Positions 9,469-16,237 of a DNA stretch of 64,000 bases are shown here, piece by piece. The position numbers and the translations under genes were made by a program. Position 1 is the first letter of the stretch; every line of letters starts with the position of its first letter. Location of the stretch: IMG/VR virus record IMGVR_UViG_3300008110_000030, positions 62,001-126,000 of that record, one strand, 5' to 3'. Under the pieces are notes generated by a model. That model had not been told where the DNA came from. It saw nothing but the letters and a program-made list of their open reading frames with translations, and ran no database searches.

Positions 9469-9914
9469 TGAAAATTGGACTTAGTTATAGTCGCTGTGTT
9501 AGAGATATCGTTGACGGTGTGGTAGACCTAGACGATGTGCTAGTATTAATTACACGCACAGACTTTGATCCACACAATGACGAACAATGGGCAAGCATTT
9601 GGTTGGGGTACGGGGGCGGAACTGAAAATGCGTACACACGTGGATTCTTTAGTCACAGTAATCCTGAGTGGGCTGGATATCCTCCTGAAGAAGAAGCCAA
9701 ATTTCGTTTGATTAGTACTGAACTGTATGATCAAGGTAAATTGCATCAGCCTCGTAAGTTTGGAGCTCATCCAAAACGACGTCCTGAAATTTGGCTAGAA
9801 GCAGTATTACCAAACAGCGAGTTGGACAAAAACCCAGCAGCCAAAGCCGCTTGGAATAGATTCCAGATGATTGCTGGATTAACAAATGTAGAATTAGATG
9901 ACAAATATCAATAA
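9468..9914 (+). CDS. conserved phage hypothetical protein
   Basis: TAATG overlap; [14 protein letters not shown]...GKLHQPR. Confidence 0.7.
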
Positions 9915-9924
9915 AGGAAACAAA

Positions 9925-10545
9925 ATGAGTTTAGTGCCAATGGTGGTTGAGAAAAGCAATCAAGGCGAACGTGCCTATGACATTTATAGTCGATTGCTCA
10001 AAGATCGTGTGATCTTTTTGAACGGTGAAGTGGAAGACTATATGGCCAATGTAATTATTGCGCAACTACTATTTTTAGAAAGTGAGAATAGCGAGTTGGA
10101 TATTCACTTGTACATTAATAGTCCAGGCGGTAGCGTGAGTGCCGGTCTTGCAATTTACGACACTATGCAGTTCATTAAACCTGATGTATGTACCTATGTA
10201 ATGGGACAAGCGTGTAGTATGGGCAGTTTCCTTGCACAAGCAGGGGCTCCTGGTAAACGAGTAGTACTACCAGAATCACGCACAATGATTCATCGTGTGA
10301 GTTCAGGTACTCGTGGTACAAGCGGTAGTATTCACGTACAAGACTTGCAATTTGAAGATGCTAAACGTAGCTTTGAAGAAGCACAGCGTATTAACAAACG
10401 TTTGACTGAACTGTATGTACGTCACAATACTGTAGGCAAAACTTATGAAGAGCTGTTTGAGACTATGAAGTTTGATACGTTCTTGAGTGCCTCCGAAGCA
10501 GTATCTAATGGTCTTGCTGACCAAGTGATTGCAAAACGTCCTTGA
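9925..10545 (+). CDS. clpP: ATP-dependent Clp protease proteolytic subunit
   Basis: [24 protein letters not shown], catalytic Ser in GQACSMGS, His in MIHR, Asp in DTFLSA; AAGGA RBS before ATG 9925. Confidence 0.95.
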
Positions 10546-10586: not shown

Positions 10587-11666
10587 ATGGCAGGACCTGC
10601 ATTTAACAGCAATCAGCTAATCAAAAACATACGTCCAGATCAACTGGACATACGTAAAGGGGAACTATCTGGAGATTTGATTTCAGGTGGTTCCATTTCT
10701 ACGTTTGCTTCTACTGGTATTAAAGATGAAGCAAGTCAAACTTCTCTCATTGTCAAAGATAATGAAATAATTGTTGACAACATTACTACCAAGCAATTAA
10801 CAGGAAATATACTAGTTGAAGGTAATTTACAAGTATCTGGTCAAATAACTGCTGACCGAATACATGTTCGAGAATTAACTTCAGATAGAACATATGATAA
10901 AATGTATCTAGAGTTTCAACCTGTAGATACAGCAAAAAATCCAAACGGTAGTGGACTCATTTGGAAAGGTACTGACTATACCAAATTATTTGTTCTTAAA
11001 ACAGACAAGTTTTTTAGTAGCGAACATATTGATTTACATGCTGATAAAAGTTTCAAAATTGACAATGTTGATGTACTAACAAAAAATTCTTTAGGTTCAA
11101 CTATAAGAAAAAGTAGTCTTAGAGAAATTGGAACACTACATCATTTAACAGTAAGTGGCGATGTAAGTTTAGCTGACTTTGTAACATTTAGCAGTGACCA
11201 ACAAAGAATATCAATTAACGTTGAACAACCTGTGGGCACTATTACCATAGGCGATGTTATGCAAGACGTAATCATGAACATTGATGTTGACAATGGTCGT
11301 GCTAAAATTGGAACCTATAATAATAGACCTTTTGATCTAACTGCTGGTGATCAAACGCTAGTAACATTAGATCCAAAAGGAATAGTTAGTGTTGGTCATG
11401 AATATAAAACAGACACTGAAATTCGTTTGTACGGCAAAGTAGGAATTAATGTTAAGCATCCTGAAGCAGATTTAGATGTTAAGGGCGGTATAAGATTTGG
11501 TAATAAACTTTTCATGGTATATAATTCTCCTCCAGAAAAAGGTAATTACAAGAGAGGGGACATAGTTTGGAACGAATCCCCTGCTATTAATTCACCTTTA
11601 GGCTGGGTATGTATTGTATCAGGTTCGCCTGGTAAATGGGCATCATTTGGGGACATTCATGAATAG
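10587..11666 (+). CDS. probable virion structural protein (tail-fiber-like)
   Basis: Beta-rich fiber-like repeats (GNLQVSG, GKVGIN...LDVKG), C-terminal GDIVWN...GWVC..G.PG.W; late-type promoter upstream. Confidence 0.6.
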   Translation: MAGPAFNSNQLIKNIRPDQLDIRKGELSGDLISGGSISTFASTGIKDEASQTSLIVKDNEIIVDNITTKQLTGNILVEGNLQVSGQITADRIHVRELTSDRTYDKMYLEFQPVDTAKNPNGSGLIWKGTDYTKLFVLKTDKFFSSEHIDLHADKSFKIDNVDVLTKNSLGSTIRKSSLREIGTLHHLTVSGDVSLADFVTFSSDQQRISINVEQPVGTITIGDVMQDVIMNIDVDNGRAKIGTYNNRPFDLTAGDQTLVTLDPKGIVSVGHEYKTDTEIRLYGKVGINVKHPEADLDVKGGIRFGNKLFMVYNSPPEKGNYKRGDIVWNESPAINSPLGWVCIVSGSPGKWASFGDIHE

Positions 11667-12006
11667 GCATATTAAAACAGACAAAATTAAAAAACAAACT
11701 ACTTATTGGCTTTGGTTTGGTAGGGTAAGTCCACTACTATTCCTTATTGGATCTTTTTCGTTATTTGAAATTTTCAATACACAAATACCATTCATTTTCT
11801 ATTCCAGTTGGATAATTTTTGTTACAATATCTTTAATTTGGTGGGCTTGGGTTCTTAGGACTATTTTAGAATTTATTAAATTTTTTCAAGAAGTCAGTCA
11901 CTCTGTTGAAGACATAAAAGACAATATAATTGAAGTTCAACAGAGTATAACAATTTTGAAAGATTTAGAGTCAAACATAAACAAAAAGATTGACAATCCT
12001 AAATAA
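11659..12006 (+). CDS. membrane protein (2 TM plus coiled coil)
   Basis: Two hydrophobic segments; ATG at 11659 after GGGGA overlaps the upstream stop. Confidence 0.6.
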   Translation: MNRHIKTDKIKKQTTYWLWFGRVSPLLFLIGSFSLFEIFNTQIPFIFYSSWIIFVTISLIWWAWVLRTILEFIKFFQEVSHSVEDIKDNIIEVQQSITILKDLESNINKKIDNPK

Positions 12007-12017
12007 TAATGTATAAT
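11990..12017 (+). promoter_or_regulatory. sigma70-type promoter for the queD-like gene
   Basis: TTGACA (11990-11995), 16 bp, TATAAT (12012-12017). Confidence 0.7.
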
Positions 12018-12024
12018 TACTATA

Positions 12025-12067
12025 TGCGGCCTTAGGCATTCATCCCGCAATATAAATTCTGCATGTC
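12025..12067 (+). ncRNA. candidate cis-regulatory H-type pseudoknot in the 5' UTR of the queD-like gene
   Basis: P1 TGCGG/CCGCA, P2 GGCAT (12035-12039)/ATGTC (12063-12067), A-rich linker; begins at the predicted transcription start. Confidence 0.4.
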
Positions 12068-12090
12068 ATTGTTCATAAAGGAAAACAACA

Positions 12091-12630
12091 ATGGCAAAAT
12101 ATCTTTCAACAAAAACATACGGTAACGACCGCGGCTTATCATGCTGTTTTAGACAGTGGCGTAGTACACATAGTCACTGCTCATTACTGCACGGATATTC
12201 AATTGGTATTAAACTAGTTTTTGAATCTGAAACACTGGATACTCGAAATTGGGTCATGGACTTTGGCGGACTCAAAGCATTTAAAGAGTGGGCTGACCAC
12301 ATGTTTGATCATACTTTGGTAATTGCTGAAGATGATCCCCATCGTGCCATGTTTGAAAAGATGGCTAGTTTGGGCTTACAAGATAAAGGTGGAGTGTGTG
12401 ACGTCCGTATCGTAGAAGGTGTAGGATGTGAAAAATTCAGCGAATTAGCTTTTAAAACCATGCAAGAAATTTTGGAAACTTTCCAAAGAGGCGAAGGTTG
12501 GGAATTAAAAGACCAAACAGGCAAAACAGTAAAACTGTTTGGTGCTCGATACCCAGTTGGTTCTGATGTTAAATTACGGTCAGTAGAAGTTTTTGAACAT
12601 GCGGGCAATTCAGCAGTTTACGAAGGTTAA
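12091..12630 (+). CDS. queD: 6-pyruvoyl-tetrahydropterin synthase / QueD-like T-fold protein
   Basis: HCSLLHGY, NWVMDFGGLK, FDH, GCEKF, VEVFEH; AAGGA RBS. Confidence 0.75.
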   Translation: MAKYLSTKTYGNDRGLSCCFRQWRSTHSHCSLLHGYSIGIKLVFESETLDTRNWVMDFGGLKAFKEWADHMFDHTLVIAEDDPHRAMFEKMASLGLQDKGGVCDVRIVEGVGCEKFSELAFKTMQEILETFQRGEGWELKDQTGKTVKLFGARYPVGSDVKLRSVEVFEHAGNSAVYEG

Positions 12631-12784
12631 GAAACTTTGGCGTCTTTGGGCTAAGGCTTTGGGTGAAAAATCCGGCAGTTCGGATGAAGAAGCAGATAAA
12701 ATCGCTTGCATTCGGACTGCAATTGTGTTAACATATATTATAACAAACTTTTTTATTGTAGCAGGCGTTATAAGGCATTGGTAA
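12593..12784 (+). CDS. small membrane protein, start uncertain
   Basis: LWRLWAKALGEK...IVAGVIRHW with one TM segment; fills the gap and is TAATG-coupled to the next gene, but no clear ATG. Confidence 0.5.
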   Translation: MNMRAIQQFTKVKKLWRLWAKALGEKSGSSDEEADKIACIRTAIVLTYIITNFFIVAGVIRHW

Positions 12785-13191
12785 TGACTACTGGATTTAC
12801 ATGTTCAACATTTGATTTGTTTCACGCAGGTCACGTAATGATGCTCAAAGAAGCCAAAGAGCATTGTGATTATCTTCTTGTTGGGCTACAAACAGATCCA
12901 ACCATAGATAGACCACACAAAAACAAGCCTATCCAAACAGTATTTGAACGTTTTATACAATTAAAGGCTTGTAAGTATGTTGACGAAGTTGTAGTGTATG
13001 CTACTGAAAAAGAACTTCGAGACATATTGCTTTCTTATCCTATTAGTATTAGAATACTGGGAGAAGAATATGCTGGTAAAGAATTTACTGGCGATGATAT
13101 TGATATGGACTTTTATTTCAATCGACGAGAGCACAGTTTTTCAACAACCGAACTAAGACAGCGTGTAGTAGACGCAGAAAGTAAAAAATGA
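12784..13191 (+). CDS. cytidylyltransferase (TagD/HIGH family)
   Basis: TFDLFHAGH, KYVDEV, R..SFSTTELR; ATG at 12784. Confidence 0.85.
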   Translation: MTTGFTCSTFDLFHAGHVMMLKEAKEHCDYLLVGLQTDPTIDRPHKNKPIQTVFERFIQLKACKYVDEVVVYATEKELRDILLSYPISIRILGEEYAGKEFTGDDIDMDFYFNRREHSFSTTELRQRVVDAESKK

Positions 13192-14204
13192 TTAAGCGCA
13201 TAGGCTTTGCATGTAAGTGGATCGACACTCCTGATCAAGTAGATGGTATCAGGGCTACTGATGATTGTAAGCAATACAACACTGGTGCTACCACCATAAC
13301 TTGGTTAAATAAACAAACAAAAGAAGTTGCTGAACAAAAGCTATGGGATCTAATGGTCCAGAACTTAGAAGCGACTCGTTTGCTTGTTGAAAGGGTAGGT
13401 AAACAACATGAAAGACTCCGCATGGTTCGCCTTAGTAGCGACATTCTTCCTGCTTATACCCAGTCTGATTGGAGTTACTTTTGGAGCAAGCCTGACGTTG
13501 TCCAGTATCTTGAACGCAATTTTATCCTTATTGGGGATAGTGCTCGTGCAAGCAATACCCGTGTTTCTATGCATCCTGGTCAGTTTACTGTTCTTGCTAG
13601 TGATAATCCGGACATTGTTCGGCGAAGCATAGAGGAGTTTGAATATCATGCAGATATGGTCAGGTACATGGGCTACGGTAAACAATTTCAGGACTTTAAG
13701 ATCAACGTCCACATCTCGGGTAGAGCCGGTCCCGAAGGTATTCGAGCTGCCTACAAAAAACTTACCCCCGAAGCAAGAAATTGCATCACCATTGAAAATG
13801 AGGAAATGAGCCATGGTTTATCTACTTGCTTGTCTCTTGGTGACCTTCTTCCTATTGTACTTGATATCCATCATCATTGGATTAAAGAAGGTGAATACAT
13901 CATGCCTAATGACCCAAAAGTACAGCAAGTACTTGACAGTTGGCGTGGTCTTCGCCCTACTATGCACTATAGCGTTAGCAGGGAAGACGTGTTGGTTGGT
14001 CATTGCACACTGACTAAACCTGATCACAAGACTCTGTTAGAGTCTGGACATAAAAAACAAAAACTTAGAGCACACAGTAATTTTTATTGGAATAAAGAAG
14101 TTAATGATTGGGCTTTGACTTTTAATGACCAATTTGATATTATGTGCGAAAGCAAGGCTAAGAACCTAGCCAGCAAGGCATTGTTTGACTACAGCAATAC
14201 TTGA
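13188..14204 (+). CDS. uvsE: UV-damage endonuclease (UVDE)
   Basis: RIGFACK, RLSSD, SMHPGQF, ITIENEE, VLDIHHHW, MHYS, MCESKAK. Confidence 0.9.
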   Translation: MIKRIGFACKWIDTPDQVDGIRATDDCKQYNTGATTITWLNKQTKEVAEQKLWDLMVQNLEATRLLVERVGKQHERLRMVRLSSDILPAYTQSDWSYFWSKPDVVQYLERNFILIGDSARASNTRVSMHPGQFTVLASDNPDIVRRSIEEFEYHADMVRYMGYGKQFQDFKINVHISGRAGPEGIRAAYKKLTPEARNCITIENEEMSHGLSTCLSLGDLLPIVLDIHHHWIKEGEYIMPNDPKVQQVLDSWRGLRPTMHYSVSREDVLVGHCTLTKPDHKTLLESGHKKQKLRAHSNFYWNKEVNDWALTFNDQFDIMCESKAKNLASKALFDYSNT

Positions 14205-14709: not shown

Positions 14710-15435
14710 ATGTTAAAAATTACAAATCTCTCCGTCAATTACGACGTTATTCCAATTTTGGAAGATATCAATTTAGAAATCAATGAAGGCGAAATTCACG
14801 CCATTTTAGGACCAACAGGTTCAGGCAAAAGTTCCTTAGTCAGTGTTATTGCTGGCAAATCAGATCTTAGCGTTGTCAAAGGTAAAATAAACTTTAAGAG
14901 AAAATCTTTAAACAGTTTAGATCCAAATGAAAGAAGTAAATTAGGAATTTTTACAACATTTCAGGAGCCACCTGAAATTAATGGCATTACAAATTTAAAT
15001 TTAACTAGACAAATTTTGAATGCTCGAAATGATAAAAGATCATCAACTGACGTTATTAATGATTATAAAAATTTAATAAAACAATTTGATCTAGGAAGCG
15101 AATGGTCTAATCGAGATTACAACGTAGGAGCAAGCGCAGGCGAAAAAAAGAAAAATGAAATTGTACAGTTATACATGCTCAATCCATCTCTTACAATTTT
15201 AGACGATATTGACAGTGGCTTAGACTTAGACACACTAACTGAAGTATTTAAAAGTTTAAAATCTTTCCTCTCACAAAAAGGAAAGGCAGCTATCATTATC
15301 ACACATCAACCAACGATCCTTGAAGCAATAGAGCCCACACATGTGCATGTTATCATAGATGGAAGAATCGTGGAGTCAGGTGATAAGAAAATAATTAAAA
15401 GGATCATTTCAAATGGCTATCGAGAGTTTTCTTAA
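14710..15435 (+). CDS. sufC: SufC-like ABC ATPase with degenerate signature and Walker B
   Basis: EIHAILGPTGSGKSS, FQEPPEI, SAGEKKKNEIVQ, ILDDIDSGLD, IITH, VHVIIDGRIVESG. Confidence 0.85.
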   Translation: MLKITNLSVNYDVIPILEDINLEINEGEIHAILGPTGSGKSSLVSVIAGKSDLSVVKGKINFKRKSLNSLDPNERSKLGIFTTFQEPPEINGITNLNLTRQILNARNDKRSSTDVINDYKNLIKQFDLGSEWSNRDYNVGASAGEKKKNEIVQLYMLNPSLTILDDIDSGLDLDTLTEVFKSLKSFLSQKGKAAIIITHQPTILEAIEPTHVHVIIDGRIVESGDKKIIKRIISNGYREFS

Positions 15436-16237
15436 AGTTGATTCACAAGACCCAGATTGGTCAAACAGTCCTACACAGTACTTTGGTAAAAAATTTAAGG
15501 TCATTGATGCAAATTGCTTAATGATAAAAGAAAATACTGATGACTTGATGGTTCTACGTATGAATCCAACTGAATCAGATTTGTTATGCAAAAATTTACA
15601 AGTGCTTGGAAGAGACAGTAGTAGGCTAGACTTATTCATTCTATGCGATGGATCTAAAAATACTCAACAGGTTTTTATTTACAATGTAACTGCTGAACCA
15701 AATTCAATTATTAATATTGGGATTTTTGTTAAAGACGGGAAACTTAATAAGCATATATTTGAATGTGAGCTATACGAAAACTCTGTTATTAATATCTTTG
15801 GTCTAGCAGAAAATGGGGTTGGCGGTAGCAGTGAGATTATAAGCAAAGTTTATCACGCTGGTCCTTGTGCAGAGAGCAACACGTTTGTAAACAGTATTGC
15901 TGGAAAAAATAGTCGAACTGTCTTTCAGGGTATTGTTAAAATTGAAGAAGACATGATAGACAGCGTGTCCAGTGTAACTAATACCAGTATTGTCTGTGAC
16001 GAAACTTCACAAGCATTTAGTACTCCACAAATGGTTATTGACTGTGGACAAGTACGGGCGTATCATAGTTGTGAAGTTACTACAATTGACGAACATAGTC
16101 TATGGTATTTAGAAAGCAAGGGCATTGATAAAGTCAGTGCTGAGAACTTGTTAAAAACCCTGCATCAAGATAGTGTGTTGGAACTTATTGAATATCAAGA
16201 CATTAAAGATGAACTCAAAGATTTTTTCCAAAGTTAA
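15413..16237 (+). CDS. sufD: SufD/SufB-family beta-helix protein, most like SufD
   Basis: SRTVFQGIVKI, STPQMVID..V.AYHS, LWYLESKGI; lies between sufC and sufS. Confidence 0.75.
   Translation: MAIESFLKVDSQDPDWSNSPTQYFGKKFKVIDANCLMIKENTDDLMVLRMNPTESDLLCKNLQVLGRDSSRLDLFILCDGSKNTQQVFIYNVTAEPNSIINIGIFVKDGKLNKHIFECELYENSVINIFGLAENGVGGSSEIISKVYHAGPCAESNTFVNSIAGKNSRTVFQGIVKIEEDMIDSVSSVTNTSIVCDETSQAFSTPQMVIDCGQVRAYHSCEVTTIDEHSLWYLESKGIDKVSAENLLKTLHQDSVLELIEYQDIKDELKDFFQS

What the first reader, a model, noticed from the sequence alone, without database searches (positions are those of the whole stretch)
12021..12090. Riboswitch-like pseudoknot at the start of the queD-like transcript
Seen: a GC-rich island in an AT-rich leader that begins about 7 nt after TATAAT. 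P1 (TGCGG/CCGCA) closes a 15-nt loop, an A-rich linker follows (ATATAAAT), and ATGTC can pair with loop GGCAT about 10 nt before the AAGGA RBS. Known: preQ1-I riboswitches are tiny H-type pseudoknots (5-bp P1, A-rich tail) upstream of que genes, and QueD acts in preQ0/preQ1 synthesis, which phages also use for 7-deazaguanine DNA modification. Inference: a variant preQ1/pterin-sensing riboswitch or a protein-binding operator. The loop does not match the canonical preQ1-I consensus as I recall it.
Basis: partly seen in the sequence, partly recalled or inferred. Interest (0 to 1): 0.65.

Follow-up and report, generated by a model that had tools for sequence, protein, structure and literature searches.

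The report
Phage pseudoknot switch before QueD gene
The leader of a giant freshwater phage's QueD-like gene carries a small conserved RNA pseudoknot. It has the hallmarks of a previously undescribed riboswitch that would open the ribosome-binding site when an unidentified ligand is present.

Summary

**Structure.** Homologous leaders from more than 190 viral contigs keep the same H-type pseudoknot.
- P1 (12025-29 with 12045-49) is 99.5% paired, and its middle pair switches among C-G, A-U and U-A.
- P2 (12035-39 with 12063-67) is 86% paired in a gap-free alignment, against 55% in shuffles. All five pairs show compensatory changes.
- Loop nucleotides are invariant: UCA.C, A.A.A, UCUGC, and a C directly 5' of the P1 3' strand.

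The 3' strand of P2 is also the 5' arm of a hairpin (12064-73 with 12087-96) that buries the AUG. In other phages the equivalent hairpin buries the Shine-Dalgarno sequence instead. The pseudoknot and the hairpin exclude each other, which predicts a translational ON switch.

**Context.**
- There is one copy per genome, always ahead of a QueD-family gene.
- These phages also carry FolE and a QueE-like enzyme.
- The motif occurs only on viral or MAG contigs. It was not found in four cultured-phage QueD loci scanned with the model, nor by two BLASTN searches of the cultured-phage collection.
- It matches no Rfam 15 family, and I found no description in the literature.
- It resembles preQ1-I in fold, but it is larger, fails that model, and has the opposite regulatory logic.

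Ligand binding is untested.

The parts
11990..12017 (+). Sigma-70-type promoter: TTGACA, 16 nt, TATAAT. The predicted start of the transcript is at about 12024-12025, the first nucleotide of P1.
   Evidence: 12 of 12 consensus matches; 50 of 168 distinct homologous upstream contexts carry such a promoter, with the -10 box ending mostly 6-8 nt before P1. The transcription start itself was not mapped.
12025..12029 (+). P1 5' strand (UGCGG)
   Evidence: columns 3-7 with 29-33 are 99.5% paired in 115 sequences. The middle pair is C-G 70, A-U 27, U-A 18.
12030..12034 (+). L1 (CCUUA). The first three positions follow the family pattern N-C-U. The rest varies in length between homologues.
   Evidence: L1 plus the P2 5' strand is 9-14 nt in the protein-anchored set. 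C and U at L1 positions 2-3 are invariant.
12035..12039 (+). P2 5' strand (GGCAU)
   Evidence: gap-free alignment A2 of 120 sequences. P2 is 86.2% paired against 54.8% in shuffles. 204 cells have changes on both sides. All 5 pairs covary. Slid registers give 28-48%.
12040..12044 (+). L2 (UCAUC). U, C, A and the last C are invariant. C12044 sits directly 5' of the P1 3' strand, the position of the specificity cytosine in preQ1-I.
   Evidence: invariant in 50 of 50 distinct aptamers retrieved through the protein alone; one lineage carries U there instead.
12045..12049 (+). P1 3' strand (CCGCA)
12050..12062 (+). L3, 13 nt (A-rich, then UCUGC). A at positions 3, 5 and 7 and the final UCUGC are invariant. 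Positions 4 and 6 covary with the middle P1 pair.
   Evidence: alignment columns 37 and 39 against pair 5-31 give MI 0.97 and 0.71.
12063..12067 (+). P2 3' strand (AUGUC). Four of its five nucleotides also belong to the sequestor hairpin.
12064..12096 (+). Sequestor hairpin. The 5' arm is 12064-12073. The 13-nt loop holds the Shine-Dalgarno AAGGA (12078-12082). The 3' arm is 12087-12096 and contains the AUG (12091-12093).
   Evidence: 10 bp, about -9 kcal/mol.
in 144 of 148 distinct platforms the P2 3' strand pairs with the SD or the AUG region.
the non-coding nucleotide before the AUG pairs with its partner in 84 of 86 (C-G 57, U-A 23, G-C 3, A-U 1). Shuffles gave a mean of 61 and a maximum of 69.
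12091..12630 (+). QueD-like gene of the 6-pyruvoyl-tetrahydropterin synthase family, 179 aa; the regulated gene.
   Evidence: Pfam PTPS, 4.9e-13. PHROG 2389 QueD-like, 4e-33; 42-47% identity to QueD of cultured phages, which include ones reported to carry 7-deazaguanine DNA modifications.

Best explanation
The leader RNA of the phage QueD-like gene folds into a roughly 45-nt H-type pseudoknot aptamer: a 5-bp P1, a 4-7-bp P2, and invariant nucleotides in L1, L2 and L3.

The 3' strand of P2 can pair in two ways. It can pair with the aptamer loop to form the pseudoknot. Or it can pair with the start-codon region (the Shine-Dalgarno sequence in other phages) to form a hairpin that blocks ribosome binding.

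I infer that a small molecule binds and stabilises the pseudoknot. This withholds the anti-RBS strand from the hairpin and switches QueD translation ON.

The ligand is probably a heterocycle with a guanine-like face read by the invariant cytosine next to P1. Candidates are a pterin or folate precursor, guanine or deoxyguanosine, or a 7-deazaguanine intermediate.

Shown: the two helices, their covariation, the invariant loops, the competing hairpin, and the exclusive link to QueD-family genes.
Inferred: ligand dependence, the ligand class, and the ON direction.
For: (1) P1 and P2 covary strongly, in alignments not fitted to the structure.

(2) Many G-U pairs in P2 place the structure on the mRNA strand.

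(3) About 20 loop positions are invariant in 50 distinct aptamers found through the protein only. Flanking upstream sequence is unalignable, and third codon positions of QueD have a mean major-allele frequency of only 0.65 in the combined protein- and pattern-retrieved set.

(4) L3 positions covary with the middle P1 pair, as expected if L3 lies in the P1 groove.

(5) In 144 of 148 distinct expression platforms the P2 3' strand pairs with the AUG region (87) or the SD (53), in several unrelated architectures. The pair at position -1 of the AUG covaries.

(6) In the window the sequestor is worth about -9 kcal/mol and the bare P2 duplex only -2.6. P2 therefore needs extra stabilisation to win.

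(7) There is one copy per genome, always before a QueD-family gene or an operon that contains one.

(8) FolE and a QueE-like gene are present in the same genomes.
Against: - No binding or expression experiment exists.
- The single-sequence fold is not significant.
- A swap test of tail against RBS complementarity was weak (z about -1.8). Nearly all tails can pair with nearly all RBS regions.
- An ON switch on a biosynthetic gene is unusual. The classical preQ1-I logic is OFF.
- The pseudoknot might form constitutively during transcription, or it might be bound by a protein.
- TGT/DpdA was not detected and QueC gave only weak hits. The end product of the pathway, and so the expected effector, is unclear.
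Confidence: 0.6

Rival explanations
1. Protein-binding translational operator. A phage or host RNA-binding protein, possibly QueD itself or a phage translational regulator, recognises the pseudoknot and shifts the balance between the pseudoknot and the RBS hairpin.
For: The same structural evidence applies. Phages such as T4 are known, from my general knowledge, to use translational operators. The motif is restricted to one group of phages, which would fit a clade-specific protein partner.
Against: About 20 invariant nucleotides sit in the loops of a 45-nt knot beside freely covarying helices. An invariant C occupies the preQ1-I specificity position. This pattern is typical of small-molecule aptamers. 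No conserved RNA-binding protein gene accompanies the motif; neighbouring genes vary.
Confidence: 0.15
2. Ligand-independent folding device. The pseudoknot forms first during transcription and keeps the RBS open for a time, or acts as a thermometer or stabiliser of the 5' end. There is no specific effector.
For: - P2 is transcribed before the RBS, so kinetic trapping is possible.
- In 50 of 168 contexts P1 starts at the predicted 5' end of the transcript, where a structure could protect the mRNA.
Against: A stabiliser or timer does not need invariant unpaired nucleotides in three loops, nor L3-P1 covariation. In about 70% of contexts no strong promoter immediately precedes the motif, so in those it is probably internal to a longer transcript.
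Confidence: 0.15
3. A diverged but ordinary preQ1-I riboswitch that binds preQ1 or preQ0 and represses QueD (OFF), for example because the bound knot blocks the ribosome standby site.
For: It shares the fold topology, a 5-bp P1, an A-rich L3 start, a C before the P1 3' strand, and a que gene downstream (features of the class from PMC10622847).
Against: - The Rfam PreQ1 models give no hit at E<=10 in 11 representatives.
- The aptamer is about 15 nt larger than preQ1-I aptamers.
- The SD is not part of P2.
- The P2 3' strand competes with an RBS-sequestering hairpin, which gives ON logic.
Confidence: 0.1

Closest known systems
preQ1-I riboswitch (Rfam RF00522; types I-III)
   Same: - H-type pseudoknot with a 5-bp P1.
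- P2 formed between the hairpin loop and the 3' tail.
- L3 begins A-rich.
- An invariant C lies directly 5' of the P1 3' strand, where preQ1-I has its specificity cytosine (PMC10622847).
- It sits upstream of a queuosine / 7-deazaguanine pathway gene.
   Different: - The aptamer is about 45-50 nt rather than 30-34.
- L1 is 5-10 nt with an invariant C-U.
- L3 is 13 nt and ends in an invariant UCUGC.
- P2 is 4-7 bp and does not contain the SD.
- The predicted logic is ON, not OFF.
- It is not detected by the Rfam model.
- It is found only on phage-like contigs.
Guanidine-III riboswitch (general knowledge)
   Same: A small H-type pseudoknot that acts as a translational ON switch.
   Different: Unrelated conserved nucleotides and unrelated gene context (guanidine export). 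No Rfam match here.
THF-II (folE motif) and THF-I riboswitches
   Same: Cis-regulatory RNAs in the pterin/folate branch that starts with FolE. They read the guanine-like face of a pterin (PMC6800512, PMC9881143).
   Different: THF-II is a simple hairpin with an internal loop placed upstream of folE. There is no sequence or model match here.
add adenine riboswitch (general knowledge)
   Same: A translational ON switch. Ligand-stabilised aptamer pairing withholds a strand that would otherwise sequester the SD and AUG.
   Different: It is a three-way junction purine aptamer, not a pseudoknot.

Membership tests
preQ1-I riboswitch | H-type pseudoknot: a 5-6 bp P1, with P2 formed between the hairpin loop and the 3' tail | tested here: met
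   both helices covary. Shuffle and slide controls are far below the observed values.
preQ1-I riboswitch | Highly conserved specificity cytosine immediately 5' of the P1 3' strand | tested here: met
   C12044 is invariant in 50 of 50 protein-anchored aptamers. One divergent lineage has U. Its role in ligand reading is untested.
preQ1-I riboswitch | A-rich L3 docking in the P1 minor groove | tested here: inconclusive
   L3 has invariant A at three alternating positions, and the two positions between them covary with the middle P1 pair. But L3 is 13 nt and ends in UCUGC. No 3D data exist.
preQ1-I riboswitch | Recognised by the family covariance model; compact 30-34 nt aptamer | tested here: not met
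   No hit to RF00522, or to any other family, at gathering score or at E<=10 in the window or in 10 other loci. The aptamer is about 43 nt in the window and up to about 50 nt elsewhere.
preQ1-I riboswitch | Shine-Dalgarno sequence (or a terminator strand) is part of P2, giving ligand-dependent repression | tested here: not met
   The SD lies 10-25 nt downstream of P2. The P2 3' strand is instead an anti-RBS strand.
preQ1-I riboswitch | Binds preQ1 or preQ0 | not testable with these tools
   Needs in-line probing, ITC or SPR.
Riboswitch (general) | Conserved aptamer in the sense-strand 5' leader, with covarying helices and invariant unpaired nucleotides | tested here: met
   About 69 G-U or U-G cells in P2 fix the strand.
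Riboswitch (general) | Expression platform with mutually exclusive pairing that involves an aptamer strand | tested here: met
   The swap test was weak.
Riboswitch (general) | Direct, protein-free binding of a metabolite or ion that changes gene expression | not testable with these tools
Programmed -1 frameshift pseudoknot | Lies inside a coding overlap, a few nt downstream of a slippery heptamer | tested here: not met
   The element is non-coding. In 50 of 168 contexts it starts at a predicted transcript 5' end.

The most novel reading that the evidence does not exclude
A previously undescribed riboswitch class that, in the collections searched, occurs only on viral and phage-like metagenomic contigs. 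It would be a preQ1-I-like pseudoknot with inverted (ON) logic. It would sense a pterin, guanine or 7-deazapurine metabolite and commit FolE's product to the QueD-QueE branch during infection by giant freshwater and marine phages.
Probability: 0.5. Interest if true: 0.85.

Novelty: new variant of a known kind. Interest (0 to 1): 0.78.

Why it matters
- Riboswitch classes are normally defined in bacteria. A class carried only by viruses would show that phages evolve their own metabolite sensors to time auxiliary metabolism.
- The element is tiny, abundant in lake and marine viromes, and has clear covariation. It is an easy target for ligand screening and structure determination.
- Finding its ligand would show what signal these giant phages use to divert GTP-derived pterin into the 7-deazaguanine branch.
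- That would help explain why they keep FolE, QueD and QueE with no detectable TGT/DpdA and no clear QueC.
- A natural ON-type relative of preQ1-I would also be useful for studying RNA folding and for building synthetic switches.

Tried and rejected
- **Rfam 15.** Gathering thresholds on the whole window gave no hits. E<=10 on 11900-12200 gave only four chance hits below threshold, none to a preQ1 family. E<=10 on 10 further loci gave no hits. The element is therefore not a catalogued family.
- **Single-sequence folding.** Not significant.
- **Cultured phages.** BLASTN of the leader gave only chance hits. Model R1 with filters off on the QueD regions of Chryseobacterium phage MA9V-3, Xanthomonas phage PhiXhv-15, Synechococcus phage BUCT-ZZ01 and Microcystis phage Me-ZS1 found nothing.
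- **Bacterial and archaeal genomes.** A pattern scan of 596 Gb gave 24 matches. Only 7 have P1 and P2 pairing, and all 7 are on MAG contigs (4-32 kb) with QueD-like or phage-like context.
- **Extra copies.** None in G000-G004.
- **QueD loci without the motif.** L037, L061/L063, L071 and L080 have no model hit.
- **Tail swap test for RBS complementarity.** Weak, z about -1.8. I replaced it with the position-specific count.
- **RNA evidence.** Only metatranscriptome contigs were available. They show relatives' aptamer core and platform in RNA libraries. They cannot show transcript ends, and DNA carry-over is not excluded.
- **Literature.** Six full-text searches and several papers read; no description of this motif was found. 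Guanine-II was checked and is a three-way junction, so it is unrelated.
- **Leader peptide or uORF reading.** Rejected: the ATGs inside the motif are not conserved.
- **Not used.** The large protein searches, because family scans settled the gene's identity. The metagenome scan, because the viral and genome scans gave enough. No alternative genetic code.

Full report
**Setting.** The window is bases 62001-126000 of a 214.6-kb IMG/VR virus record that CheckV rates 61% complete. Relatives reach 343-382 kb at 98-100% completeness, so this is a giant phage. Runs holding its DNA come mostly from lake and freshwater metagenomes, in at least 14 studies.

**The observation.**
- A perfect TTGACA-16 nt-TATAAT promoter lies at 11990-12017.
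- Seven nt follow, then P1: 12025-12029 with 12045-12049, closing a 15-nt loop.
- An A-rich linker follows.
- Loop GGCAU (12035-12039) is complementary to AUGUC (12063-12067).
- AAGGA lies at 12078-12082 and the AUG at 12091.
- The AUG opens a 179-aa ORF that matches Pfam PTPS and PHROG 2389, 'QueD-like'.

On its own the fold is unremarkable, with a z-score of -1.32. The same fold shows a second, 10-bp hairpin (12064-12073 with 12087-12096). It has the SD in its loop and the AUG in its stem, and it overlaps the P2 3' strand by four nucleotides.

**Comparative evidence for the pseudoknot.**
- A protein-based search found 597 viral contigs with a QueD homologue. Of the 80 fetched (71-100% protein identity), 78 have upstream sequence and 73 of those carry the motif. 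The sequence further upstream is unalignable.
- A pattern scan added at least 120 more viral contigs.
- In a MAFFT alignment of 115 distinct aptamers, P1 is 99.5% paired. Its middle pair is C-G 70, A-U 27 and U-A 18.
- For P2 I used a gap-free 37-nt alignment anchored on the invariant UCA and CUGC, so that the register was not fitted to the pairing. It is 86.2% paired against 54.8% in shuffles. It has 204 cells with changes on both sides, and all five pairs covary. Registers slid by 1-3 columns give 28-48%.
- About 69 G-U or U-G cells in P2 place the structure on the mRNA strand.
- In some lineages P2 extends to 7 bp; in others one pair is deleted on both sides together.

**Conserved loops.** Fifty distinct aptamers were reached through the protein alone, so they are unbiased by the RNA pattern. 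In them:
- L1 begins N-C-U.
- L2 is U-C-A-N-C.
- L3 is N-U-A-N-A-N-A-Y-U-C-U-G-C, with A at positions 3, 5 and 7 and the final UCUGC invariant.
- The C directly 5' of the P1 3' strand is invariant.

In the combined protein- and pattern-retrieved set, third codon positions of the adjacent gene have a mean major-allele frequency of 0.65. The two variable L3 positions between the invariant A's covary with the middle P1 pair. That is expected if L3 lies along P1, although shared ancestry could contribute.

One divergent lineage (L230, L233, L235) has U in place of the invariant C. It sits before a 194-aa PTPS-family gene only distantly related to the window's.

**Expression platform.**
- In 144 of 148 distinct platforms the first nucleotides after CUGC, which are the P2 3' strand, pair in the MFE structure with the start-codon region (87 cases) or the Shine-Dalgarno sequence (53 cases). 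Several unrelated architectures do this.
- In the AUG class, start positions +4 and +5 are paired in 97% and 92% of cases.
- The non-coding nucleotide at -1 covaries with its partner: C-G 57, U-A 23, G-C 3, A-U 1. That is 84 of 86 paired, against a shuffle mean of 61 and maximum of 69.
- A cruder swap test was weak.
- In the window the sequestor is worth about -9 kcal/mol and the isolated P2 duplex only -2.6.
- No U-tract terminator follows the hairpin.

The pseudoknot and the RBS hairpin are therefore mutually exclusive, and the pseudoknot needs extra stabilisation to prevail. This is the design of a translational ON switch.

**Gene context.**
- The motif is single-copy in each of five genomes: 57-64 bits, with the next best hit at or below 17 bits.
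- 184 of 194 instances directly precede the QueD-like gene by my first automatic call. Several of the other ten are QueD genes missed by that call (TTG starts, contig ends).
- In the remaining real cases the motif precedes a second PTPS paralogue, a methyltransferase, a cupin or an unknown 243-aa gene. Each of these that could be followed is itself followed by QueD.
- The protein is 42-47% identical to QueD of cultured phages, among them Pseudomonas phage Iggy, the Rhizobium RHEph phages and Microcystis phage Me-ZS1. In the Synechococcus BUCT-ZZ01 and Microcystis Me-ZS1 loci fetched, QueD lies beside QueE and FolE, and in Me-ZS1 also beside QueC and a TGT.
- The window's genome and five relatives all have FolE and a QueE-like radical-SAM gene.
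- No TGT/DpdA was detected, and QueC gave only weak PP-loop hits.
- The pathway is therefore secure as far as 7-carboxy-7-deazaguanine and open beyond it.
- FolE and QueE are not under the motif. Only the QueD step is, and that is the step that removes dihydroneopterin triphosphate from the folate branch.

**Distribution.**
- A scan of one genome per prokaryotic species gave 24 pattern matches. Only 7 have both helices, and all 7 lie on MAG contigs (4-32 kb) with the same QueD-like or phage-like context. No isolate genome has the motif.
- Four cultured-phage QueD leaders lack it, and BLASTN of the leader against the phage collection finds nothing.
- Lake metatranscriptome contigs contain the aptamer core and platform of relatives. 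This is weak evidence for transcription.

**Comparison with known families.**
- No Rfam 15 family matches, at gathering thresholds or at E<=10, in the window or in ten other representatives.
- Full-text searches found no description of the motif.
- The nearest known fold is preQ1-I. Its defining features, taken from PMC10622847, are an H-type pseudoknot, a 5-6 bp P1, an A-rich L3 along P1, a specificity C, and the SD inside P2.
- The phage element shares the topology, the P1 length, the start of L3, the C, and a que-pathway gene.
- It fails the covariance model, is about 15 nt larger, has its own invariant L1 and UCUGC signatures, and places the SD outside P2 with inverted logic.
- I therefore do not file it as a preQ1-I member. 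I describe it as a new candidate class with a preQ1-I-like architecture.

**Mechanism and ligand (inference).**
- P1 and P2 are transcribed before the RBS.
- If an effector locks the knot, the anti-RBS strand stays occupied and QueD is translated.
- Otherwise the more stable hairpin closes over the AUG.
- The invariant C beside P1 suggests a ligand with a guanine-like Watson-Crick face.
- Given ON logic at a branch-point enzyme, I rank the candidates in this order: a reduced pterin or folate species (substrate feed-forward or folate sufficiency), then guanine or deoxyguanosine, then 7-deazaguanine intermediates.
- None of this is tested.
- The rivals are a protein-bound operator, a ligand-free kinetic or stability element, and an ordinary OFF-type preQ1 sensor. 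Each is listed with its refuting test.

**Limits.**
- There are no experiments, no mapped transcript ends and no 3D model.
- The invariance figures from pattern-retrieved loci are partly circular, so I quote the protein-anchored set for them.
- Read laying was given 3001 letters.
- No alternative genetic code was used.

Noticed in passing
L230:1965-2014 (also L233, L235): A natural variant of the motif has U instead of the invariant C next to the P1 3' strand. It has an intact P2 and its own TTGACA/TATACT promoter 7 nt upstream. It sits before a divergent 194-aa PTPS-family gene. By analogy with C-to-U specificity changes in purine and preQ1 aptamers, it may read a different ligand.
   Followed up: partly
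G000:C1:135826-136721 (outside the window, same genome): The QueE-like radical-SAM gene of this genome is split over two reading frames: aa 2-52 in one frame and aa 59-285 in another, with about 47 nt between. It is intact in five relatives. This is either an assembly error or a real frameshift.
   Followed up: partly
window 9898-10545, 14710-15435, 15413-16237, 13188-14204, 12706-13191: The neighbourhood encodes ClpP protease, a SufC-like ABC ATPase next to a SufB/D-like protein, a UvdE UV-damage endonuclease, and a cytidylyl/adenylyltransferase (RfaE domain II-like). This is an unusual set of auxiliary genes for a phage.
   Followed up: no
window 12782-13187: One metatranscriptome contig (run X18, 7 mismatches) joins 12782 to 13187 and skips 404 nt. 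A relative appears to lack most of the cytidylyltransferase-like gene.
   Followed up: no
L068:2429-3525: Some relatives carry two tandem QueD-family paralogues (168 aa, then 174 aa). The motif precedes the first. The same 168-aa type follows the motif on several MAG contigs (L205, L221, L226).
   Followed up: partly
Alignment A1 columns 37 and 39 with pair 5-31 (window 12053 and 12055 with 12027-12047): Two L3 positions change in step with the identity of the middle P1 base pair. With C-G they are C/U and A; with A-U or U-A they are A and mostly U/C. This looks like base-triple covariation.
   Followed up: partly
window 10587-11666: The gene two positions upstream matches virion-structural and tail-fibre PHROGs. 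The QueD unit, with its own consensus promoter, therefore sits directly after structural genes.
   Followed up: no
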